Part shown: positions 6,301 to 27,924 of the stretch, piece by piece
Layout: each line of letters opens with the position of its first letter
Numbering within the stretch: position 1 is the first letter of the stretch
From: Ascidiella aspersa
Taxonomy: Eukaryota
Reading direction: 5' to 3'
NCBI GenBank assembly: GCA_963924565.1
Contig: OZ004607.1
Location: 30,442,001-30,506,000 of the forward strand
DNA length: 64,000 bases
The notes under the pieces: model-generated
What the model was told of the DNA's origin: nothing
Databases searched by the model: none
Seen by the model: only the letters and a program-made list of their open reading frames with translations
Translations under genes and position numbers: made by a program

Positions 6301-9300
6301 AGAAAGATAACTATGATTGCCGAAACGTACACCGGAGATTTTAATTCTTTACCAAACGTTTCGGTAACCTATGCAAGCCGCCTTCGCCAGGGTGAATGGC
6401 GCCTGCATAGGTTGCCGAAACGTTGGTAAATAATTAAAATTACCAGAGGACCTGTTTTTTGATTTAATACTATGCGTGGTAGCAACAGTTTATATATGTA
6501 CATTGTACACTGGAGATTTTTCGGCCTCTTGTTTCATTACGAACGAGTAAATTAATGTGGGCTTGTATACTTAATTGAAACCAGCCGACGTCAATTTGTT
6601 TCGACAACCTATCACTCCTAACTGTCGTAAATATTTGTAGTCACCCCTCAATAATTTCAATTTTAGCATTTCTTGCAAAAACATAAGGCAAATATTAAGC
6701 GATCTCATAAGGTCAACATAACGTTCGACAAGCCCATAGTTAGCGCCGAGGCTGTACATTTGACCTCGGTCTATTTGCGCAACAAGGCGCCGAGTTTATT
6801 TTGGCCCCGCGACCGCCCAGAAATCCGGGCCCAGCTTTTAGTGCACGAGGTTAAGCGTTACGTACCGAAAGCGCAACAGCGGACTGACACGGGCGCGTAA
6901 TGCCTCAAGTCAGAAGATCAAAAGGTGTCAGTGTCATGTTTCAACCTGCCTCGCCTCCTAACTTGGATTACCCCACTACAAGTACATGGTCCTTAGGAGT
7001 GGGGCTCGGTGAGTTTACTCGGTGACTATAAAAGCAGAACCTTTCTGTATTTTTTGGATAAAAATGGTAGGAAACAGATAATTTGAAGGTTCAACAAAAT
7101 ACGAACCAAATAAGGACAAAATGTGAAAAGCTCGTTAAAAACGGAGCCTGTTAGTGTTACTATTAAAGGGTACCAATGGTAAAAAACAACAAAAAATTTA
7201 TTTAGTTACAATTACAGCAAAATAAAAATGACACAAAACAATCCAGGAAAAGGTGATTGCAGAGTGAACAAACTCATTCGGAAAATTCACATTCCTAAAG
7301 CATTAGTCGCATAATATAGCGCAGATTAAAATAAATCTTCCGTTAAAAAATATGCTGCTTTCTCTATTTGTACCTTGAACGGTGACCTTGGCCTTCCTCG
7401 ATCTGAGCACGTACATGGTGACCTGGCACTCGAATATATTGTCGTCTTCCACCACATTGGCGTTCTTAATCAGCAGGTTGTACTCGCCCCTGGCTGCGTT
7501 GCCCACCATGAAGTAGCGATCCCAGTCTGTCGATTGATAAAGTTGTCGGTTTAGTTAATGTTATACTAAATTTATAACCAAATTAATTATCGAAACCTTC
7601 AGAAAGCATATGACCAACGATGGCGGCATATTAACAACGATTTAGGGAGGTTGCAAGGGCTGATCAGAGAGTAGGCTACACATCGAAGGGAAATGCGATA
7701 ACTAATAACTGTTTGTGAAGGGTTTTAAATCGTTGCCACCACATTCGCGAATTCTTTAGCAATGATGGCGTGTTGCACTTATCACGAAAACAGTTGTCAA
7801 AAGCAACATTAGGACTTTTTTCCACGCGTGCCACAACAAATGACCGTTCAAAACCATGACCTTATTTTCATAAAAGTTAGACAAGTTTTCGGCGAACTGT
7901 CGCAAATTTATTCCCTGGCGAGAAAATGTCGGCAGGTCAATTACCGACCTAACAAACGTACAGCGTATACGTATAATACAATGCGGTAAGTGCGTCGTGT
8001 GGCGAACCACAGCGGCTGCAACACATGACCCGAGTCCTATGGCAGCTGCGAGGGTCACAAGCTGCGATTCGACACGCACCCAACTCCGCTGCCGCAACTC
8101 ACTACATACAAGCAGCAGCCTTAGTGAAGAGGCCAAATTGCAGCGCTGTTACCCGTCGTGGTACAGACGTGCTATGCTTAGCTAGCGCAGGGATATTATA
8201 TTTTAACCCATTTTTGCAATAGTGCGGGGTGGTGGTTTGATGGTTTGCTTACCCTATAAAGATTTTTTTTAAACCAAGCGATTTGTAGTTATGCGGTTGA
8301 TAAAATCCATTGGCGGTTTTGTGTAAAAAGTGTAAAGGACGCATAGTCCAAATATGGATAAAACAATTCTTGAAAACAAAGTTCAAATTTTAAACATTAT
8401 AAACTTATTTACATCGCCGGTTAGCCAAACCAAAACAGGTCAAGCATGTGAAAAGGGGTGATAATTCGCGCTTCAAATCAACTACAAAGCTGCTTCATTG
8501 CACTAAACCACAACAAAACAGGCGTGTTGGAATTCAAAAGAGAGCTTTCAAAGTGTTAAACAAGTCCATTATTTCAAAGTTATAGAAAATCGTGCACGAA
8601 CCGCGCCAACTTAAAAGACTTGTTTCACGCTCAGCCCTGAAATACAAGCAGAAAACAGGCCAATTTCCGCAGTAGCGCCGTAATTCCAATTTGGCGGCGA
8701 GCGGCGTCGCCGCCGTAGGAATTACGCCGTAATTTCGTCGTAATCGGGCCTACCCTTGAACCGCGATGACGCGAACACGCCACGGTGTGTTCCTTCAGGT
8801 GCGGATGCCGAGCTCCGTTGATTGACTTAATCGTCGTCCAATTAAAGCGACGATCGCGGTCTATGGTCACGATCGGTAAAATCGATTCGGCGCCACCTTG
8901 GAGCCAAGCCATTATTAACTTGGGCTATTTGCGACTCATTATGGGACTGTTTACACGGCAAACTTGAAAGTACAAGGCTCGCTGTTATTATGCAGTCTTA
9001 TAGGCTAAAGAAATAAAACGAATGGCTGCCGGTTTTTAGGCCACGCGAATTTACCGATTCATGTAAAAAAGTACCAAAACCGTGCTATAAATACTGGGGT
9101 ATACCAACTTTGAAGCCGTCCTTTTCTCCAGTTGAAAAACAGGCACTAAAGTGCAAGTTCGCAGCGCTTTGCGTCATTGGCAAGTGCAAAGCGCGAGCGG
9201 TTATTGACTCGGATTATTGACGAGTCTTTATGAGCAATTTCGCATACACCCGGCCGCTCTGGTCCCAAACGTCAGCTTAAGCGTCGAATTCCCGGGCGTT

Positions 9301-23300: not shown

Positions 23301-24009
23301 CCCTTGGAAACGACCTATTAGCGACACACAGGCTGCCAACAACAACGACAAAGAAAGTGTCCGAGAGTGGGGTGGGTGGGGGCTAATAGGGGTGTGCGAA
23401 GAGGGGTCGTGTCGCGCTCACTTGGGTTTCTTTGCACTATAGTTGCCGGGGCCCCCTTTCGTGCGCACACTGCGTGAAGACGCGAAAAACCTTGTAAATC
23501 AAATTGATTGTGTCTTTGGAATTCAGCACTGTCGAGTTTTAATTTCGACCCTCTTCTTTTATTAGTTTGCGGCCGCGCCAGAAAAGAGTTTCAATTTCGG
23601 CAAAGACAGCGATGTCTGTAAAACATCTGTCGTGTTTATTACGAAACATCCAATTTTTTATGAAATTGTGGCTTGAGGTTGTTTTTAATTTTAAGGGCTT
23701 ATCGGCAAAATTAAACCTAACGCAACACATTTTATTTCCAAAATACAAAAACTCGTCTCAGTAAATTTACCGCTTCCTGTATTTAACCGAAAAAAAAATG
23801 CGCTAAGAAAAATACAGTAATTTCTCACAACCATGACCAAGTAAACAGCAGGCTGTAGCATTCTCATTGCACAGCACATATATAGCTGGTAAACGAAAAG
23901 GTGAAATCCTTTCGCCAGGCCGCCGCGAGACTACAGGGCTATTTGCGCGCATATACTGGAGACACGTCAAAAATGGGGGGTTGTTTGTTCTCGTAGAAAA
24001 CACTCCCAA

Positions 24010-24068
24010 GTCCTACTGCATACCTCCTCGTGGTGTCGGACGGAAACAGTTAGGCTGGCTAAATGCAG
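24010..24068 (+). ncRNA. Candidate HDV-like self-cleaving ribozyme in the LINE 5' UTR
   Basis: P2 (C)TGCAT/ATGCA(G); P3 ACC/GGT around L3 TCCTCGT; P1.1 CC/GG (24042-43); P4 CAG/CTG; J4/2 G-C24059-TAA; candidate P1 GTCCTAC/GTCGGAC (6 of 7 pairs). Confidence 0.65.
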
Positions 24069-24128
24069 GGGTCGGCAAGGAAAGGCAATGGCAAACCATC
24101 CTTGTAATTCTTTGCCTAGTCAACATGA

Positions 24129-27125
24129 ATGAACACTGATAGAAAAAAATTAAACGATAACAGCGTTAACGGTAACCAACTCCAGTCAGGAGCAGTTATC
24201 TCGCTCGGTAGGGATCATGATGTTCGTCAGGTCATACCCGATCGTCATTCAGCTACTCGTCGAAACCAATCAAAGTTAAAAAGGATTGCAACATGGAATG
24301 TACGAACCATGCATCAGAAAGGAAAAGTGGAAAATGTGATTTTGGAGATGAAGAGGTTAAAAATTGATATTCTTGGCATATCTGAAATGAGATGGACAGA
24401 CCAAGGCGAAATTACTAAACAAGGATTTAAAATCATATGGTCTGGAGGAAGCAAGCATGAGCGTGGCGTTGGTTTCATACTCGGAAATAAAACTGCTGAA
24501 AGTTTTATGGGATGCTTGGCTGTATCCGATAGAATCATTCTTCTTAAACTGAAAGGTCAGAGGACTAATCTCAACATTATACAGGTTTATGCTCCTACTG
24601 AAAAAGCCCCTGACGATGAGATTAGAACGTTCTACACACAACTGAATTTAGTTAAAAAGAAATGCAAACACGGTGAAATTATAATTGTGATGGGAGATTT
24701 CAATGCAAAGGTGGGAAGAGGAAGAGACGGAGATATTGTTGGGGGTCATGGACTTGGCGATCGCAATGATCGTGGAGATTTGTTCGTGGATTGGTGTCGT
24801 ATCAACGATCTCACTATAAGCAACACATGGTTTCAGAATCATCCACGCCGCATCTGGACATGGAAATCACCAGGAGACCAGACCAGAAATCAAATAGATT
24901 ACATCACAATTTCAAGGCGCTTCAGGAATAGTGTTTTAAATGCAAAGACTTATCCAAGTGCTGACTGCTCGAGCGACCATGTACCTGTTGTCGCAAATAT
25001 CTATACCAAACTAAAGATTTGTCGAAAACCGGTAAGAAAACTGCAATACAATGTTGCCGCCTGTCAAAATGCAAAAATAAAGGAAGTACTGAAACATGAA
25101 ATGGGTAATGCACTGAAAAACCTGCATGACAAAAAACAGAGTTGGCCAGAAGACATATTCCAGGAAATCAAAACGTCACTGAGAATATTAATGGAAAACA
25201 ACCTTCCGAAAGTCCAGAGAGAGAACTTGCAAAGCTGGATGACAGATGAAATAAGAGGTTTACTGGAAAAAAGGCGCAGAACCAAAAGAAATCTTAAGAA
25301 GTACAAGGAATTAGATAGGTGTATTAAATTAAAGTGCAACTCTGCTTATGAAGAATTTCTAAATAAAAAATGTCAAGAGGTAGATAAGCTTTTTAATATC
25401 AGCGCGAAAGAAGCTCACCAAAAAATTAATCAGCTCAATGGAAAGAAGGAAAACTGGATAAAATCGGGCTGCGTGAAGAGTAAAACCGGAAAGATCTTGT
25501 TTCAAAAAGAGGAAATTAAAAATCGTTGGCGAGAATACACCCAGGAACTGTACAGTGATCCAACAAGAAACGCCCCACCAATTATGTTTAAAGAACCACT
25601 AACTGGGCCAGAAGTAATGAAATGTGAGGTTGAGAAAGCCCTGGCTAGCATGAAAAATGGAAAGGCGGTTGGTCCTGATGAAATTCCAATAGAAGTGTTG
25701 AAGGCTTTGGATGACATTGGAATCAATTTACTTCTACTTCTTATAAATAGCATTTACAACACTGGTCAAATTCCTCAAGACATGCGGAAGTCGATTTTTG
25801 TCGCACTGCCAAAAAAAGCAGGAGCAATCGAGTGCAAAGATTATAGGACAATAAGCCTTATGAGCCATATTGTTAAATTACTGCTAAGAATATGTATGAA
25901 TCGAATGAAAAACAAAATTAATGCAGAAATTGCAGAAGAACAATATGGGTTTATGACTGACAAAGGGACACGAAATGCGATATACGTGATGAGAATACTC
26001 AGCGAAAGAGCAATCGAAATGCAACAAAAACTTTATGTTTGCTTTCTTGACTACAGGAAAGCTTTTGATCGGGTCAATCATGCGCAGATGCTACAGATGC
26101 TAAAAAACATCAACATTGATGACAAGGATCTAAGAATCATTCAAAACCTTTACTACAACCAACATGCAGTGGTGCGCGTGGGAGACTCCGAAACCGAAGT
26201 TATTACCATAGAAAAGGGTGTCCGACAGGGATGTGTGTTATCTCCAGACCTTTTTAATTTATATAGCGAAATCATCTTAAGAAGCATAGCTGACTTAGAA
26301 GGGATCAAAGTTGGTGGTGTAAACATCAACAATATTCGGTACGCTGATGATACGGTACTTATTGCAACATCCGAGAAGAAGCTTCAAAATATGGTAACAA
26401 CAGTGGAAGAAGAAAGTGTGAAAATGGGAATGGCTTTAAATGAAGATAAAACAGAATGTATGGTAATTGCCAAAGTAGCAGGTGTGAACAAATGTAATAT
26501 ACTAGTTTCAGATAAACCAATTAAACAAACCCGAAGATTTAGATACCTTGGTTGTATACTTACAGATGATGGTCGGTCCAAATCTGAAATTAAAGCCAGA
26601 ATTGCACAGGCAAAAAATTGCTTTATAAATCTCAAGTCAATTTTGACAAACAAAAAATTAAATGTAAATACCCGTGTGAGAGTTCTTAAAAGTTATGTGT
26701 GGCCTGTTCTTCTCTACGGGTGTGAAAGTTGGACTTTCACAAAGGAACTGATTGACAACCTGAGTGCCGCTGAGATGTGGTTCCTGAGGAAAATGCAGCG
26801 TATATCTTTTACGTCCCATAAAACCAATCAAGAGGTACTGATTCAGACCAATCAACAGAGATCACTGTTAAGCACTATAAAACTTAGACAACTCAAGTTT
26901 TTCGGCCATATAACCAGACACCAAAAACAAGAATTCATAATTTCGTGTGGCAAAATATGTGGAAATCGTGCACCTGGACGACAAAGAAAAATGCTTATAA
27001 ATCAACTGAGGGACTTTCTGAACATCAAAGCAGAGAATATTTTTGAATTAGCAAGAAATAGTAACATATGGAGAAAACAGTGTTTCATGGCAGCCGAAGC
27101 CTGGTTCAGGCATGGCACTGAATGA
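24129..27125 (+). CDS. RTE LINE ORF: APE endonuclease + reverse transcriptase, 998 aa, uninterrupted
   Basis: APE motifs ATWNVRT, LGISEMRW, IQVYAPT, MGDFNAKVG, NQIDYI, SDHVPV. RT motifs QYGF, FLDYRKAFDRV, GVRQGCVLSPDLFNLY, YADD, YLG. RTE-type C-terminus (LLYGCESW...GRQRK) with no Cys-His finger. Confidence 0.97.
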   Translation: MNTDRKKLNDNSVNGNQLQSGAVISLGRDHDVRQVIPDRHSATRRNQSKLKRIATWNVRTMHQKGKVENVILEMKRLKIDILGISEMRWTDQGEITKQGFKIIWSGGSKHERGVGFILGNKTAESFMGCLAVSDRIILLKLKGQRTNLNIIQVYAPTEKAPDDEIRTFYTQLNLVKKKCKHGEIIIVMGDFNAKVGRGRDGDIVGGHGLGDRNDRGDLFVDWCRINDLTISNTWFQNHPRRIWTWKSPGDQTRNQIDYITISRRFRNSVLNAKTYPSADCSSDHVPVVANIYTKLKICRKPVRKLQYNVAACQNAKIKEVLKHEMGNALKNLHDKKQSWPEDIFQEIKTSLRILMENNLPKVQRENLQSWMTDEIRGLLEKRRRTKRNLKKYKELDRCIKLKCNSAYEEFLNKKCQEVDKLFNISAKEAHQKINQLNGKKENWIKSGCVKSKTGKILFQKEEIKNRWREYTQELYSDPTRNAPPIMFKEPLTGPEVMKCEVEKALASMKNGKAVGPDEIPIEVLKALDDIGINLLLLLINSIYNTGQIPQDMRKSIFVALPKKAGAIECKDYRTISLMSHIVKLLLRICMNRMKNKINAEIAEEQYGFMTDKGTRNAIYVMRILSERAIEMQQKLYVCFLDYRKAFDRVNHAQMLQMLKNINIDDKDLRIIQNLYYNQHAVVRVGDSETEVITIEKGVRQGCVLSPDLFNLYSEIILRSIADLEGIKVGGVNINNIRYADDTVLIATSEKKLQNMVTTVEEESVKMGMALNEDKTECMVIAKVAGVNKCNILVSDKPIKQTRRFRYLGCILTDDGRSKSEIKARIAQAKNCFINLKSILTNKKLNVNTRVRVLKSYVWPVLLYGCESWTFTKELIDNLSAAEMWFLRKMQRISFTSHKTNQEVLIQTNQQRSLLSTIKLRQLKFFGHITRHQKQEFIISCGKICGNRAPGRQRKMLINQLRDFLNIKAENIFELARNSNIWRKQCFMAAEAWFRHGTE

Positions 27126-27924
27126 TGATGACTGGAGACAGTGGAACGTCGGGTCAGATAACATCACCCTAAGCAAGACGGTGCAGCTAATTAAGGACAG
27201 AAGGGCAGTGACGGTAGGCAAGAGCGAGATTAACGCGAAAGTCTGTGAGTTAAAATTCAGCTGAGTGGATATTTTTGTCATTTTGAATAGCCATTAAACT
27301 GTTGAAAGTTCTCGAATTTCACCGAATTGAAATAACATTCCACCAATGATTTTTAATTTCACTGACAAAACATCTCTGTGTGGTTAGATATCGCAACCTT
27401 AATCAGTTTTTCTTTGGCTGTAATAGGTATACAGAAACACGCACTAAACAACGGTCGATTTTTCTTTGAACGATCTCTGGCTGTGCAAGTTTTGATATTT
27501 CCACCCGATTATAAACCTGACCTTTTTGCGGGCTTGGTCATTGATTTTGCGATCGATGCAGGCGATTTTGCGATTACCCCGAAGTTTTGGGCGTCGGGCG
27601 CTTTTTTTCGAATCGGGCACCGACCCTTCGTCTTGCTCACGTGACCGCAATCGATGCGAACATTGATGGAAAGTCGGTTTAAGTTTGGGCGAAATGGTTG
27701 AGTTCGCAGCGGTGGTCATGCGGCCATTTTAGGTCAAGGAAGCGCAATGTAATGAAAACGGAAAGCGTGCATCGCAGGACAATTACCCGTTTACAAGCGT
27801 CAGAATTCCGACGTTTAAATTTCCGGTGCTTAATTTGGGAGTAACAATCTGGGATTATCCCTATGTCCACCCTAAACTATAGTGGGTTACCAAGTGGGAT
27901 AATAATAAAAAATATATATATATT

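What the first reader, a model, noticed from the sequence alone, without database searches (positions are those of the whole stretch)
23965..24068. HDV-like self-cleaving ribozyme fold at the 5' end of an intact RTE LINE
Seen: the HDV double-pseudoknot elements occur in the correct order. These are P2 CTGCAT(24016-21)/ATGCAG(24063-68), P3 ACC/GGT closing L3 TCCTCGT, a 7-nt strand GTCGGAC, GG able to form P1.1 with the L3 CC, a short P4 CAG-TTAGG-CTG, and G-C-TAA with C24059 at the catalytic position. Established: HDV-like ribozymes process the 5' ends of R2 and RTE retrotransposons. Inference and oddity: the best P1 5' strand (GTCCTAC, 24010-16) has one U/C mismatch and almost no J1/2 linker. 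In addition, 45 nt containing a hairpin (GGGGGTTGTTTGTTCT-cgt-AGAAAACACTCCC) lie between the TSD and the predicted cleavage site. This copy may therefore come from an uncleaved transcript, be an unusually compact variant, or have lost its true P1 strand with the hairpin acting as a J1/2 insert.
Basis: partly seen in the sequence, partly recalled or inferred. Interest (0 to 1): 0.8.

Follow-up and report, generated by a model that had tools for sequence, protein, structure and literature searches.

The report
HDV-like ribozyme heading an RTE retrotransposon
The first ~110 bases of this jumping gene encode a self-cutting RNA of an already known type that trims the element's own 5' end, but this copy lost the first three bases of the helix that holds the cut site.

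Summary
Three HDV-like Rfam families hit the same spot, all below their gathering scores. The same core lies upstream of the ORF in three distant RTE relatives, against 0.05 expected by chance.

In sibling copies the element begins with GTCCGTC, 48-49 nt further upstream. That 7-mer pairs 6 of 7 with the P1 3' strand at 24035-41. The hairpin at 23976-24007 is therefore a structured J1/2 insert (P1.2). This is the layout of the mosquito drz-Agam-2 ribozymes.

The window copy starts at 23965 and lacks the first 3 nt of P1, leaving 3 of 7 pairs. Its catalytic core is whole, but its own cut-site helix is broken.

An empty-site allele in another sample shows the insertion is recent. RNA reads said nothing about the 5' end.

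HDV-like ribozymes at RTE 5' ends are already published (PMC6765202, PMC3774820), so this is a new member of a known kind. Two earlier first-reader notes flagged the same ribozyme on other pieces of this genome.

The parts
23956..23964 (+). 5' target-site duplication CTGGAGACA
   Evidence: Repeated at 27132-40. A contig of run X1 joins 23964 directly to the sequence that follows 27140, which is an empty-site allele.
23965..27131 (+). RTE-type LINE copy, 3167 bp, 5'-truncated by 3 nt
   Evidence: The 5' limit comes from the TSD and the empty site. The 3' limit is shared by about 30 other 3' ends at query position 232.
23965..23968 (+). Remnant (CGTC) of the P1 5' strand. Siblings have GTCCGTC here, and the cleavage site would be 5' of the missing G
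   Evidence: Pairing of window 23962-68 with 24035-41 is xxx||x|, against |||||x| in sibling L006.
23969..23975 (+). J1/2 5' linker AAAAATG. The A-run has 4-6 A among copies
23976..24007 (+). P1.2 hairpin (structured J1/2 insert)
   Evidence: MFE -11 kcal/mol, 10 bp with one bulge. It aligns to the paired GGgguG/CaccCC hairpin of RF01788.
24008..24011 (+). J1/2 3' linker AAGU
24012..24021 (+). P2 5' strand CCU(A)CUGCAU, with A24015 bulged.
   Evidence: The pseudoknot-free MFE fold pairs it with 24063-71. The RF01787 outer helix aligns here. L077 and the RF01788 consensus have the same CC-A-[P2] layout.
24022..24034 (+). P3 (ACC/GGU) closing L3 UCCUCGU. C24026 and C24027 are the L3 partners of P1.1
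   Evidence: P3 is identical in L076, L077 and L083.
24035..24041 (+). P1 3' strand GUCGGAC
24042..24043 (+). GG of P1.1
   Evidence: Aligned to the paired Gg of RF01788
24044..24057 (+). Short P4: AAA then CAG-UUAGG-CUG (the MFE fold gives 4 bp)
   Evidence: -2.4 kcal/mol, z -2.72
24058..24062 (+). J4/2 GCUAA, with C24059 at the catalytic-C position
   Evidence: C-N-A-A is kept in L076, L077 and L083. Copy L008 has T here.
24063..24071 (+). P2 3' strand AUGCAGGGG
24085..24118 (+). Conserved RTE UTR block around AATGGCAAACCA, between the ribozyme and the ATG
   Evidence: The same block occurs in L076, L077, L078 and L084, and in L094 and L165, which I take to be BovB-like from recall.
24129..27125 (+). 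Single ORF of 998 aa: AP-endonuclease domain and reverse transcriptase
27122..27131 (+). 3' end ATGATGATGA (short tandem tail). Only 6 nt follow the stop codon
27132..27140 (+). 3' target-site duplication CTGGAGACA

Best explanation
The first ~110 nt of this young RTE family encode a large HDV-like self-cleaving ribozyme of the drz-Agam-2 type. The order of its parts is: P1 (GUCCGUC, the element's first 7 nt); an A-rich linker; the P1.2 hairpin in J1/2; AAGU; an extended P2 (CCU-A-CUGCAU); P3 and L3 (ACC-UCCUCGU-GGU); the P1 3' strand (GUCGGAC); GG of P1.1; a short P4; J4/2 (GCUAA, catalytic C); and the P2 3' strand (AUGCAGGGG).

Inferred mechanism, taken from published work on R2, L1Tc and RTE ribozymes. 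The element is transcribed as part of a longer read-through RNA. The ribozyme cuts just 5' of G1. This frees an RNA that starts exactly at the element's first base, so new full-length insertions start with GTCCGTC.

Shown here: the motifs, the position of the termini, and the complementarity. Not shown here: cleavage itself.

The window copy was inserted 3 nt short. Only CGUC of P1 remains, preceded by target DNA. Its catalytic core and ORF are intact, but its own P1 is reduced to 3 of 7 pairs and has no G at the cut site. This copy most likely cannot release itself at its 5' junction.
For: 1. Termini. Seven of 10 genomic copies carry GTCC[G/T]TC at the junction: L002, L004, L005, L006, L007, L008 and L010, the last with T at position 5. 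L005 and L007 are cleanly delimited by their TSDs at G1. L003 and L009 lack only G1. The window copy lacks 3 nt. A contig from a differently labelled organism (X4) shows another flank joined to GTCCGTCA.

2. P1 pairing. GUCCGUC pairs with GUCGGAC as |||||x|, five Watson-Crick pairs counted from G1. By my own estimate from a per-position pairing chance of 0.375, not from a call, a fixed 7-mer reaches 6 of 7 or better with p of about 0.013.

3. Rfam. RF01788 (drz-agam-2-2) aligns end to end across the hairpin. It scores 26.5 bits, E 3.3e-05, on 301 nt of intact sibling L006, and RF01787 scores 27.8 bits there. From the RF01788 consensus printed, I read the same order of parts: guucuGu, AuAug, a hairpin, uACU, cCu-A-uUcAAU, AcG-UcCuCGu-CGU, AcAGAAu, Gg, P4, gCuAA, AUUGAGaGG.

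4. Published architecture. Passages of PMC4908430 state that Agam-2 ribozymes have a structured J1/2-P1.2 domain plus an extended P2, and that the RNA cleaves at its 5' terminus.

5. Relatives at 35-44% protein identity (L076, L077, L083). They keep P3 ACC/GGU, L3 UYYNCGU and J4/2 C-N-A-A. Their P1, P2 and P4 differ in sequence but stay complementary: P1 scores 7/7, 6/7 and 7/7, and P2 has 7, 8 and 4 bp. That is 3 hits in 502,682 bases of 146 loci, against 0.05 per shuffled set, all on the + strand upstream of the ORF.

6. L077 has a 96-nt J1/2 that folds to -38.1 kcal/mol, z -4.4. It shows the same AAGUCC-A-[P2] ...

7. Literature passages. HDV-like ribozymes occur in RTEs (PMC6765202), and the RTE ribozyme cleavage site coincides with the element's 5' junction (PMC3774820).
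Against: - All Rfam scores are below gathering (27.8 vs 37, 26.5 vs 38, 25.9 vs 44). A whole-genome scan with RF01788 returned nothing at E<=10, with only 34 of 6693 candidates scored.
- Even in intact siblings the family P1 has a U-U mismatch at pair 6.
- Two other 7-mers in the first 60 nt also reach 6 of 7 against the P1 3' strand, so complementarity alone is weak evidence.
- Within the family the copies are 95-100% identical and give no covariation.
- Cross-species support rests on only 3 relatives. Their helices were assigned by my own script, because MAFFT could not align them outside the core.
- In the other 5' UTRs I looked at, my regex scans found no such core, for example in L072, L073 and L096. 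L088 gave a twister hit instead.
- RNA run X5 gave 6 reads, all inside the ORF and none near the 5' end. Neither cleavage nor a 5' end is seen at the RNA level.
- The P1 reading of the RF01788 consensus is my inference. Rfam's structure line does not mark P1.
Confidence: 0.78

Rival explanations
1. P1 is GUCCUAC 24010-16 paired with 24035-41, P2 is 24016/17-21 paired with 24063-68, and cleavage is 5' of G24010. The upstream 45 nt would be an uncleaved leader.
For: Complementarity is 6 of 7. The RF02682 model places its P1 there at 25.9 bits. Compact relatives L083 and L076 do have P1 only 18-23 nt upstream of P3, so the geometry is not absurd.
Against: - No copy starts at 24010. Nine siblings align from 23965-67 or carry bases upstream of that, and one truncated copy starts at 24113.
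- The mismatch is a central U/C.
[quoted passage not shown] In Agam-2-1 constructs there was no activity without a spacer and little with 1 nt (PMC4908430 passage).
- Using this P1 removes the CC/GG extension of P2 that the MFE fold predicts.
- In L077 the homologous AAAGUCCACC segment does not pair with that ribozyme's P1 3' strand.
- One 6-of-7 match somewhere in about 50 positions is expected by chance. GUUUGUU inside the hairpin also scores 6 of 7.
Confidence: 0.08
2. The fold is a relic or a non-cleaving structured 5' UTR, for example serving only translation or protein binding. The uniform 5' end would come from an internal promoter that starts transcription at G1.
For: No cleavage data exist. 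Rfam scores are below gathering. P1 has a U-U mismatch. The reviews report that HDV-like ribozymes were also proposed to act in translation initiation (PMC6765202 passage).
Against: - The catalytic-core letters match the Rfam consensus of the two A. gambiae families letter for letter in L3 (UCCUCGU) and J4/2 (gCUAA). Activity is documented in the passages I read for Agam-2-1.
- The exact terminal 7-mer is complementary to the strand that follows P3. A promoter model does not predict this.
- P1, P2 and P4 stay complementary in relatives despite unrelated sequences.
Confidence: 0.08
3. The window copy is not defective. The remaining CGUC plus flanking bases, or a P1 formed in trans or by another register, still supports cleavage at or near 23965.
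For: Three pairs remain: C-G, G-C and C-G. The rest of the ribozyme is identical to its siblings.
Against: The three pairs next to the scissile bond are lost and no G stands at +1. HDV-like ribozymes have a 6- or 7-bp P1 (PMC4908430 passage).
Confidence: 0.1

Closest known systems
drz-Agam-2 family (Rfam RF01788 drz-agam-2-2; Agam-2-1 studied in PMC4908430), large HDV-like ribozymes of Anopheles gambiae
   Same: It has the same order of parts, including a structured J1/2 (P1.2) hairpin and an extended P2 with a bulged A after CC(U). L3 UCCUCGU, J4/2 GCUAA and the GG of P1.1 are identical. It sits at the 5' terminus of the RNA (figure legend). That this mosquito family belongs to RTE elements is my recollection of Ruminski et al. 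2011, a paper that is not held.
   Different: P3 is ACC/GGU rather than ACG/CGU. P4 is tiny (14 nt, against about 70 in the model). P1.2 is shorter (32 nt, against about 47). P2 has about 9 bp plus a bulge, against the 12 bp reported. P1 has G1-C and a U-U mismatch. The score is below Rfam's gathering score. The host organism is different and unnamed here.
drz-Agam-1 (Rfam RF01787)
   Same: It is the best bit score, 27.8. The core ACCUCCUCGUGGUGUCGG-CGGA is almost letter-identical to the family consensus, and the 9-bp outer P2 aligns.
   Different: By its consensus, drz-Agam-1 is compact: P1 is followed by a short AAAAU linker and there is no J1/2 hairpin. Its P4 is longer. The score is below the gathering score of 37.
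HDV-like ribozymes of R2, R4 and L1Tc retrotransposons
   Same: They have the same proposed role: release of the element's 5' end from a co-transcript, with cleavage at or near the 5' junction (PMC3774820 and PMC6765202 passages).
   Different: They belong to different LINE clades and differ in peripheral domains. R2 is site-specific in 28S rDNA and often cleaves upstream of the junction. This element inserts at dispersed sites.
Twister variants at RTE 5' ends (PMC7761336 passage; PMC8501958 abstract)
   Same: They sit at the same position in RTE-superfamily elements and are presumed to do the same job. One relative here, L088, has a twister-P1 hit at its 5' end (38.5 bits).
   Different: Twister is a different ribozyme class. 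The window family has no twister hit.

Membership tests
HDV-like self-cleaving ribozyme (nested double pseudoknot) | P1 of 6-7 bp whose first nucleotide follows the scissile bond | tested here: inconclusive
   Sibling L006 pairs |||||x| from G1. The window copy pairs xxx||x|. The feature is met at family level and not met in this copy.
HDV-like self-cleaving ribozyme (nested double pseudoknot) | P3 of 3 bp closing a 7-nt L3, with P1.1 formed between L3 CC and GG after P1 | tested here: met
   ACC/GGU closing UCCUCGU, with C24026-27 and G24042-43. These align to the paired P1.1 columns of RF01788.
HDV-like self-cleaving ribozyme (nested double pseudoknot) | P2 crossing P1, with its 3' strand after J4/2 | tested here: met
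   24012-21 pairs with 24063-71: 9 bp plus the bulged A24015.
HDV-like self-cleaving ribozyme (nested double pseudoknot) | J4/2 with a catalytic C followed by N-A-A | tested here: met
   GCUAA 24058-62. C-N-A-A is kept in L076, L077 and L083.
HDV-like self-cleaving ribozyme (nested double pseudoknot) | Helices supported by compensatory change in relatives | tested here: met
   P1, P2 and P4 have unrelated sequences but stay complementary in L076, L077 and L083. Three hits against 0.05 expected. The sample is small and the helices were assigned by my script.
HDV-like self-cleaving ribozyme (nested double pseudoknot) | Score at or above an Rfam gathering threshold for an HDV-like family | tested here: not met
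   27.8 vs 37 (RF01787), 25.0-26.5 vs 38 (RF01788), 25.9 vs 44 (RF02682). No other ribozyme family appeared in the window region at E<=10. These models are built on narrow seeds.
HDV-like self-cleaving ribozyme (nested double pseudoknot) | Mg2+-dependent site-specific self-scission | not testable with these tools
   This needs a bench assay. The RNA reads were uninformative.
Large drz-Agam-2-type HDV-like ribozyme | Structured J1/2 (P1.2) domain between P1 and P2 | tested here: met
   The hairpin 23976-24007 folds to -11 kcal/mol and aligns to the RF01788 hairpin. The feature is described in PMC4908430.
Large drz-Agam-2-type HDV-like ribozyme | Extended P2 (12 bp in Agam-2) | tested here: inconclusive
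   Here there are 9 bp plus one bulge, possibly a tenth pair G24010-C24073. That is longer than the usual ~7 bp and shorter than 12 (PMC4908430 passage).
RTE-clade non-LTR retrotransposon | Single ORF with an N-terminal AP-endonuclease domain and a reverse transcriptase | tested here: met
   PF03372 at residues 54-284, PF14529, and PF00078 at residues 561-810, in one 998-aa ORF.
RTE-clade non-LTR retrotransposon | Very short 3' UTR ending in a short tandem repeat, with TSDs and frequent 5' truncation | tested here: met
   Six nt follow the stop codon and the tail is ATGATGATGA. TSDs are 8-11 bp. About 40 3' ends are listed against 10 full-length 5' ends. That these traits typify RTE is recalled, not taken from a call.
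RTE-clade non-LTR retrotransposon | Phylogenetic placement of the RT within the RTE clade | not tested
   No reference LINE set was available. The only hints are a UTR block shared with contigs I take to be BovB-like and homologues with the same domains.

The most novel reading that the evidence does not exclude
The second near-complementary strand, GUCCUAC at 24010-16, may not be chance. It could be a built-in alternative P1. It might act as a folding switch that competes with the extended P2 and with the terminal P1 to time cleavage. Or it might be a backup that lets 5'-truncated copies such as this one still self-cleave, giving an RNA 45 nt shorter. The evidence does not exclude this, but nothing requires it.
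Probability: 0.06. Interest if true: 0.55.

Novelty: new member of a known kind. Interest (0 to 1): 0.3.

Why it matters
This adds one more lineage to the known link between RTE retrotransposons and HDV-like ribozymes. It also shows the large architecture (P1.2 domain plus extended P2) outside the mosquito, and in at least one metagenomic relative (L077). The family is young: three copies have an intact ORF, and an empty-site allele exists for this very insertion. It offers natural variants for testing what P1 and the catalytic C contribute: copies with an intact P1, this copy 3 nt short, and a copy with a natural C-to-T at the catalytic position. For annotation, the point is practical. In large HDV-like ribozymes the cut site can lie far upstream of the core, so the cleavage site should be read from the element termini and not from the nearest complementary 7-mer.

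Tried and rejected
- Whole-genome Rfam scans. RF01788 gave nothing at E<=10 (34 of 6693 candidates scored). RF01787 gave the same 10 copies plus one weak 21.7-bit hit. Neither revealed other ribozyme-bearing families.
- A protein scan of the genome with the first 260 aa found only this RTE family and one 26%-identical match. No within-genome divergent relatives were available for covariation.
- The genome pattern scan gave 4 non-family matches, equal to the control. L227 has P1, P2 and P4-like pairings but no C in J4/2, so I rejected it.
- Viral contigs held no relatives. The GTDB contigs gave 66 loci, few reaching an N-terminus; I did not read their 5' regions by eye, and the scan found no core in them.
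- The MAFFT alignment of four ribozymes aligned only the core. I therefore ran neither count of structure pairs nor a covariance model. Helices were tabulated by coordinates instead.
- L121 and L114(-) have the bare core, but I could not assign a convincing P1 (L121) or P2 (L114-). They are left out of the count of 3.
- RNA evidence: 6 reads from about 6% of run X5, all inside the ORF. Nothing can be said about the 5' end.
- Overall MFE z-scores for the ribozyme region are not significant (+0.85 and +0.84), as can happen for a pseudoknotted RNA.
- The primary papers were not held: Ruminski 2011 and Webb 2009. I read no whole papers, only search listings, abstract starts and 'find' passages of PMC4908430, PMC6765202, PMC7761336 and PMC3774820. 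Supplements were not opened. Supplementary Table S1 of PMC4908430 lists constructs and may bear on linker lengths.
Full report
WHAT IS THERE.

The surrounding element runs from 23965 to 27131.
- It has one ORF of 998 aa (24129-27125), with Exo_endo_phos at residues 54-284 and RVT_1 at residues 561-810.
- Six nt follow the stop codon, and the element ends in ATGATGATGA.
- It is flanked by the 9-bp duplication CTGGAGACA at 23956-64 and 27132-40.
- A contig of sequencing run X1, same species label, runs from 23700-23964 straight into the sequence that follows 27140. An empty-site allele therefore exists, the boundaries are exact and the insertion is recent.

IS IT MORE THAN CHANCE? The bare statement that the HDV elements occur in the right order is not. 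A loose descriptor of my own gave 17 hits in 521,202 nt scanned from related loci, against 20.4 per shuffled set. Three other results give specificity.
- Three HDV-like Rfam families hit the same spot and no other ribozyme family does. The scores were RF01787 27.8 bits, RF01788 25.0 bits (E 0.0024 in an 8-kb scan) and RF02682 25.9 bits. On 301 nt of an intact sibling they were 27.8, 26.5 (E 3.3e-05) and 25.9 bits. All are below the gathering scores of 37, 38 and 44, so Rfam's own membership bar is not met.
- The pattern ACCTYYNCGTGGT-N7-GG occurs 14 times in the 308-Mb genome. Ten are this family, and the other 4 equal the backwards-pattern control.
- A strict descriptor (ACC-YYYNCGN-GGT, P1 at least 6 of 7, C-N-A-A, P2 at least 4 bp) hits 3 times in 146 related loci (502,682 bases), against 0.05 per shuffled set. 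All three hits are on the coding strand upstream of an RTE ORF.

WHERE THE CUT SITE IS. The genome holds 10 copies that reach the 5' region and about 40 3' ends. No copy starts at 24010.

With flanks added, 7 of 10 copies read GTCC[G/T]TC immediately upstream of the A-run: L002, L004, L005, L006, L007, L008 and L010.
- In L005 and L007 the TSD ends exactly before that G.
- In L002 and L008 one or two letters are shared with the TSD.
- In L006, 13 nt of filler precede it.
- L003 and L009 lack only the G.
- The window copy reads acaCGTC and lacks three letters.
- A contig from a differently labelled organism (X4) shows yet another flank joined to GTCCGTCA.

GUCCGUC pairs with the strand after P3 (GUCGGAC) as |||||x|. 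The window's 23962-68 pairs as xxx||x|. So the family's first seven nucleotides form the P1 5' strand, and the inferred cut is 5' of that G.

The hairpin at 23976-24007 (-11 kcal/mol) lies between P1 and P2. The pseudoknot-free MFE fold pairs 24012-21 (CCU-A-CUGCAU) with 24063-71 (AUGCAGGGG), with A24015 bulged.

The RF01788 consensus printed shows the same order of parts:
- a 7-mer (guucuGu) complementary to the 7-mer after P3 (AcAGAAu);
- AuAug;
- a paired hairpin;
- uACU;
- cCu-A-uUcAAU, which matches AUUGAGaGG at the end.
The pairing of P1 and P2 in that consensus is my own reading. Rfam marks only the hairpin, P1.1 and P4.

Passages of PMC4908430 state three things:
- mosquito Agam-2 ribozymes carry a structured J1/2-P1.2 domain and a P2 extended to 12 bp;
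- the RNA cleaves at its 5' terminus;
- constructs with no spacer between P1 and P2 were inactive.

A protein-pattern scan of metagenome contigs gave 80 loci. About 17 of them reach the N-terminus with some upstream DNA.

Three of these carry the full motif: L076, L077 and L083, at 35%, 36% and 44% protein identity. Their P3 is ACC/GGU, their L3 is UUUACGU, UUCUCGU and UCCACGU, and their J4/2 is C-C-A-A, C-G-A-A and C-U-A-A. P1 is CUCUCAU/AUGAGAG, GAGUCGC/GCGACCU and GGGGACU/AGUCCCU, so it differs in sequence but stays complementary. P2 and P4 behave in the same way.

L083 and L076 are compact, with J1/2 of 7 and 9 nt. L077 is large. Its 96-nt J1/2 folds to -38.1 kcal/mol, z -4.4, and it keeps the AAGUCC-A-[P2] ... 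[P2']-GG layout.

Results against generality:
- My regex scans found no such core in the other upstream regions I looked at.
- L073 and L096 share a different conserved block.
- L088 has a twister-P1 hit.
- L121 and L114(-) have the core, but I could not complete their folds.
- MAFFT aligned only the core, so no formal covariation statistic was run.

MECHANISM. Shown: the motifs, the termini and the complementarity. Inferred from published work on RTE, R2 and L1Tc ribozymes (PMC6765202 passages; PMC3774820 passage): the element is transcribed within a longer RNA, and the ribozyme cuts at the element's first nucleotide. The processed RNA is then the template for new copies, which explains the uniform GTCCGTC start.

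The window copy has an intact core and an intact ORF. It lost G1-U2-C3 when it inserted, so I expect it not to release its own 5' end. That is an inference with about two-thirds confidence.

Copy L008 has a natural C-to-T at the catalytic position. ORFs of 998 aa were found in 3 of the copies scored: the window, C6:15.06 Mb and C7:18.98 Mb.

RNA reads gave no evidence either way. There were 6 reads from about 6% of run X5, all inside the ORF.

COMPARISON AND NOVELTY. HDV-like ribozymes at RTE 5' ends are in print, so this is a new member of a known kind, closest to the drz-Agam-2 architecture. Differences from Agam-2 are P3 ACC/GGU, a very short P4, a shorter P1.2, P2 of about 9 bp and a U-U mismatch in P1. 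Two earlier first-reader notes of this scan flagged a 108-letter HDV-like ribozyme at the head of RTE copies on other pieces of the same genome. That length agrees with my boundaries. The notes are unchecked and do not count as independent support.

VERDICT. Interest is modest.

Noticed in passing
L114 minus strand, reverse-complement coordinates about 6460-6650: A hammerhead-like core (CUGAUGAG, a stem-loop, then GAAAC) lies about 130 nt upstream of a compact HDV-like core. That core has P1 GGGAAAC/GUUUCCU at 7 of 7, then ACC-UCCUCGU-GGU, GG and GCUAAC. It is on the strand opposite the RTE match of this metagenome contig. I could not find a P2.
   Followed up: partly
L088:1-59: An RTE relative at 31% identity has a twister-P1 Rfam hit upstream of its ORF (38.5 bits, E 7.6e-05, cut by the contig start). 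This fits the remark in PMC7761336 that twister variants sit at the 5' ends of RTE-superfamily elements.
   Followed up: partly
L073:300-420 and L096:300-400: Two closer RTE relatives (49% and 40% identity) lack the ACC-N7-GGT core. They share a different conserved 5' UTR block, roughly GACGCC..CCTCC..TAGTAAC..CCC-ATCAGGG. It could be another structured RNA or another ribozyme type.
   Followed up: no
window 24085-24118; L076:789, L077:319, L078:109, L084:462, L094:1844, L165:1247: A block around AATGG(C/T)AA(A/C)CCA, followed by ..TTGCC, is conserved between the ribozyme and the ATG here and in distant RTE relatives. In L094 it lies downstream of the RT match, not in the 5' UTR. I take L094 and L165 to be BovB-like from recall. 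Its function is unknown.
   Followed up: partly
window 23700-23964 and 27141 onward: Run X1, same species label, holds an empty-site allele of this insertion. Its flank differs by 3 substitutions and an 11-nt deletion at 23858. Runs labelled as two other organisms (X3, X4) hold element pieces at 99-100% identity, and X3 also holds the flank 23784-23934.
   Followed up: partly
L008 (G000:C5:1049750-1050085), at the position matching window 24059: This copy has T instead of the catalytic C in J4/2 (GGTTAAAT) and a stop in its ORF. It is a natural equivalent of the classic inactivating mutation.
   Followed up: no
L227 minus strand, about 1480-1590 (G000:C6:16170956-16170977): There is an isolated ACC-UUCACGU-GGU core with P1 at 6 of 7, a 6-bp P2 (GCAACU/AGUUGC) and a 6-bp P4, but no C between P4 and P2. 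It is probably chance, since non-family matches equal the control.
   Followed up: partly
window 23969-23973 and sibling copies: The A-run between P1 and the hairpin varies among copies. It has 4 A in L005 and L009, 5 in the window, L002, L008 and L010, and 6 in L003, L004, L006 and L007.
   Followed up: no
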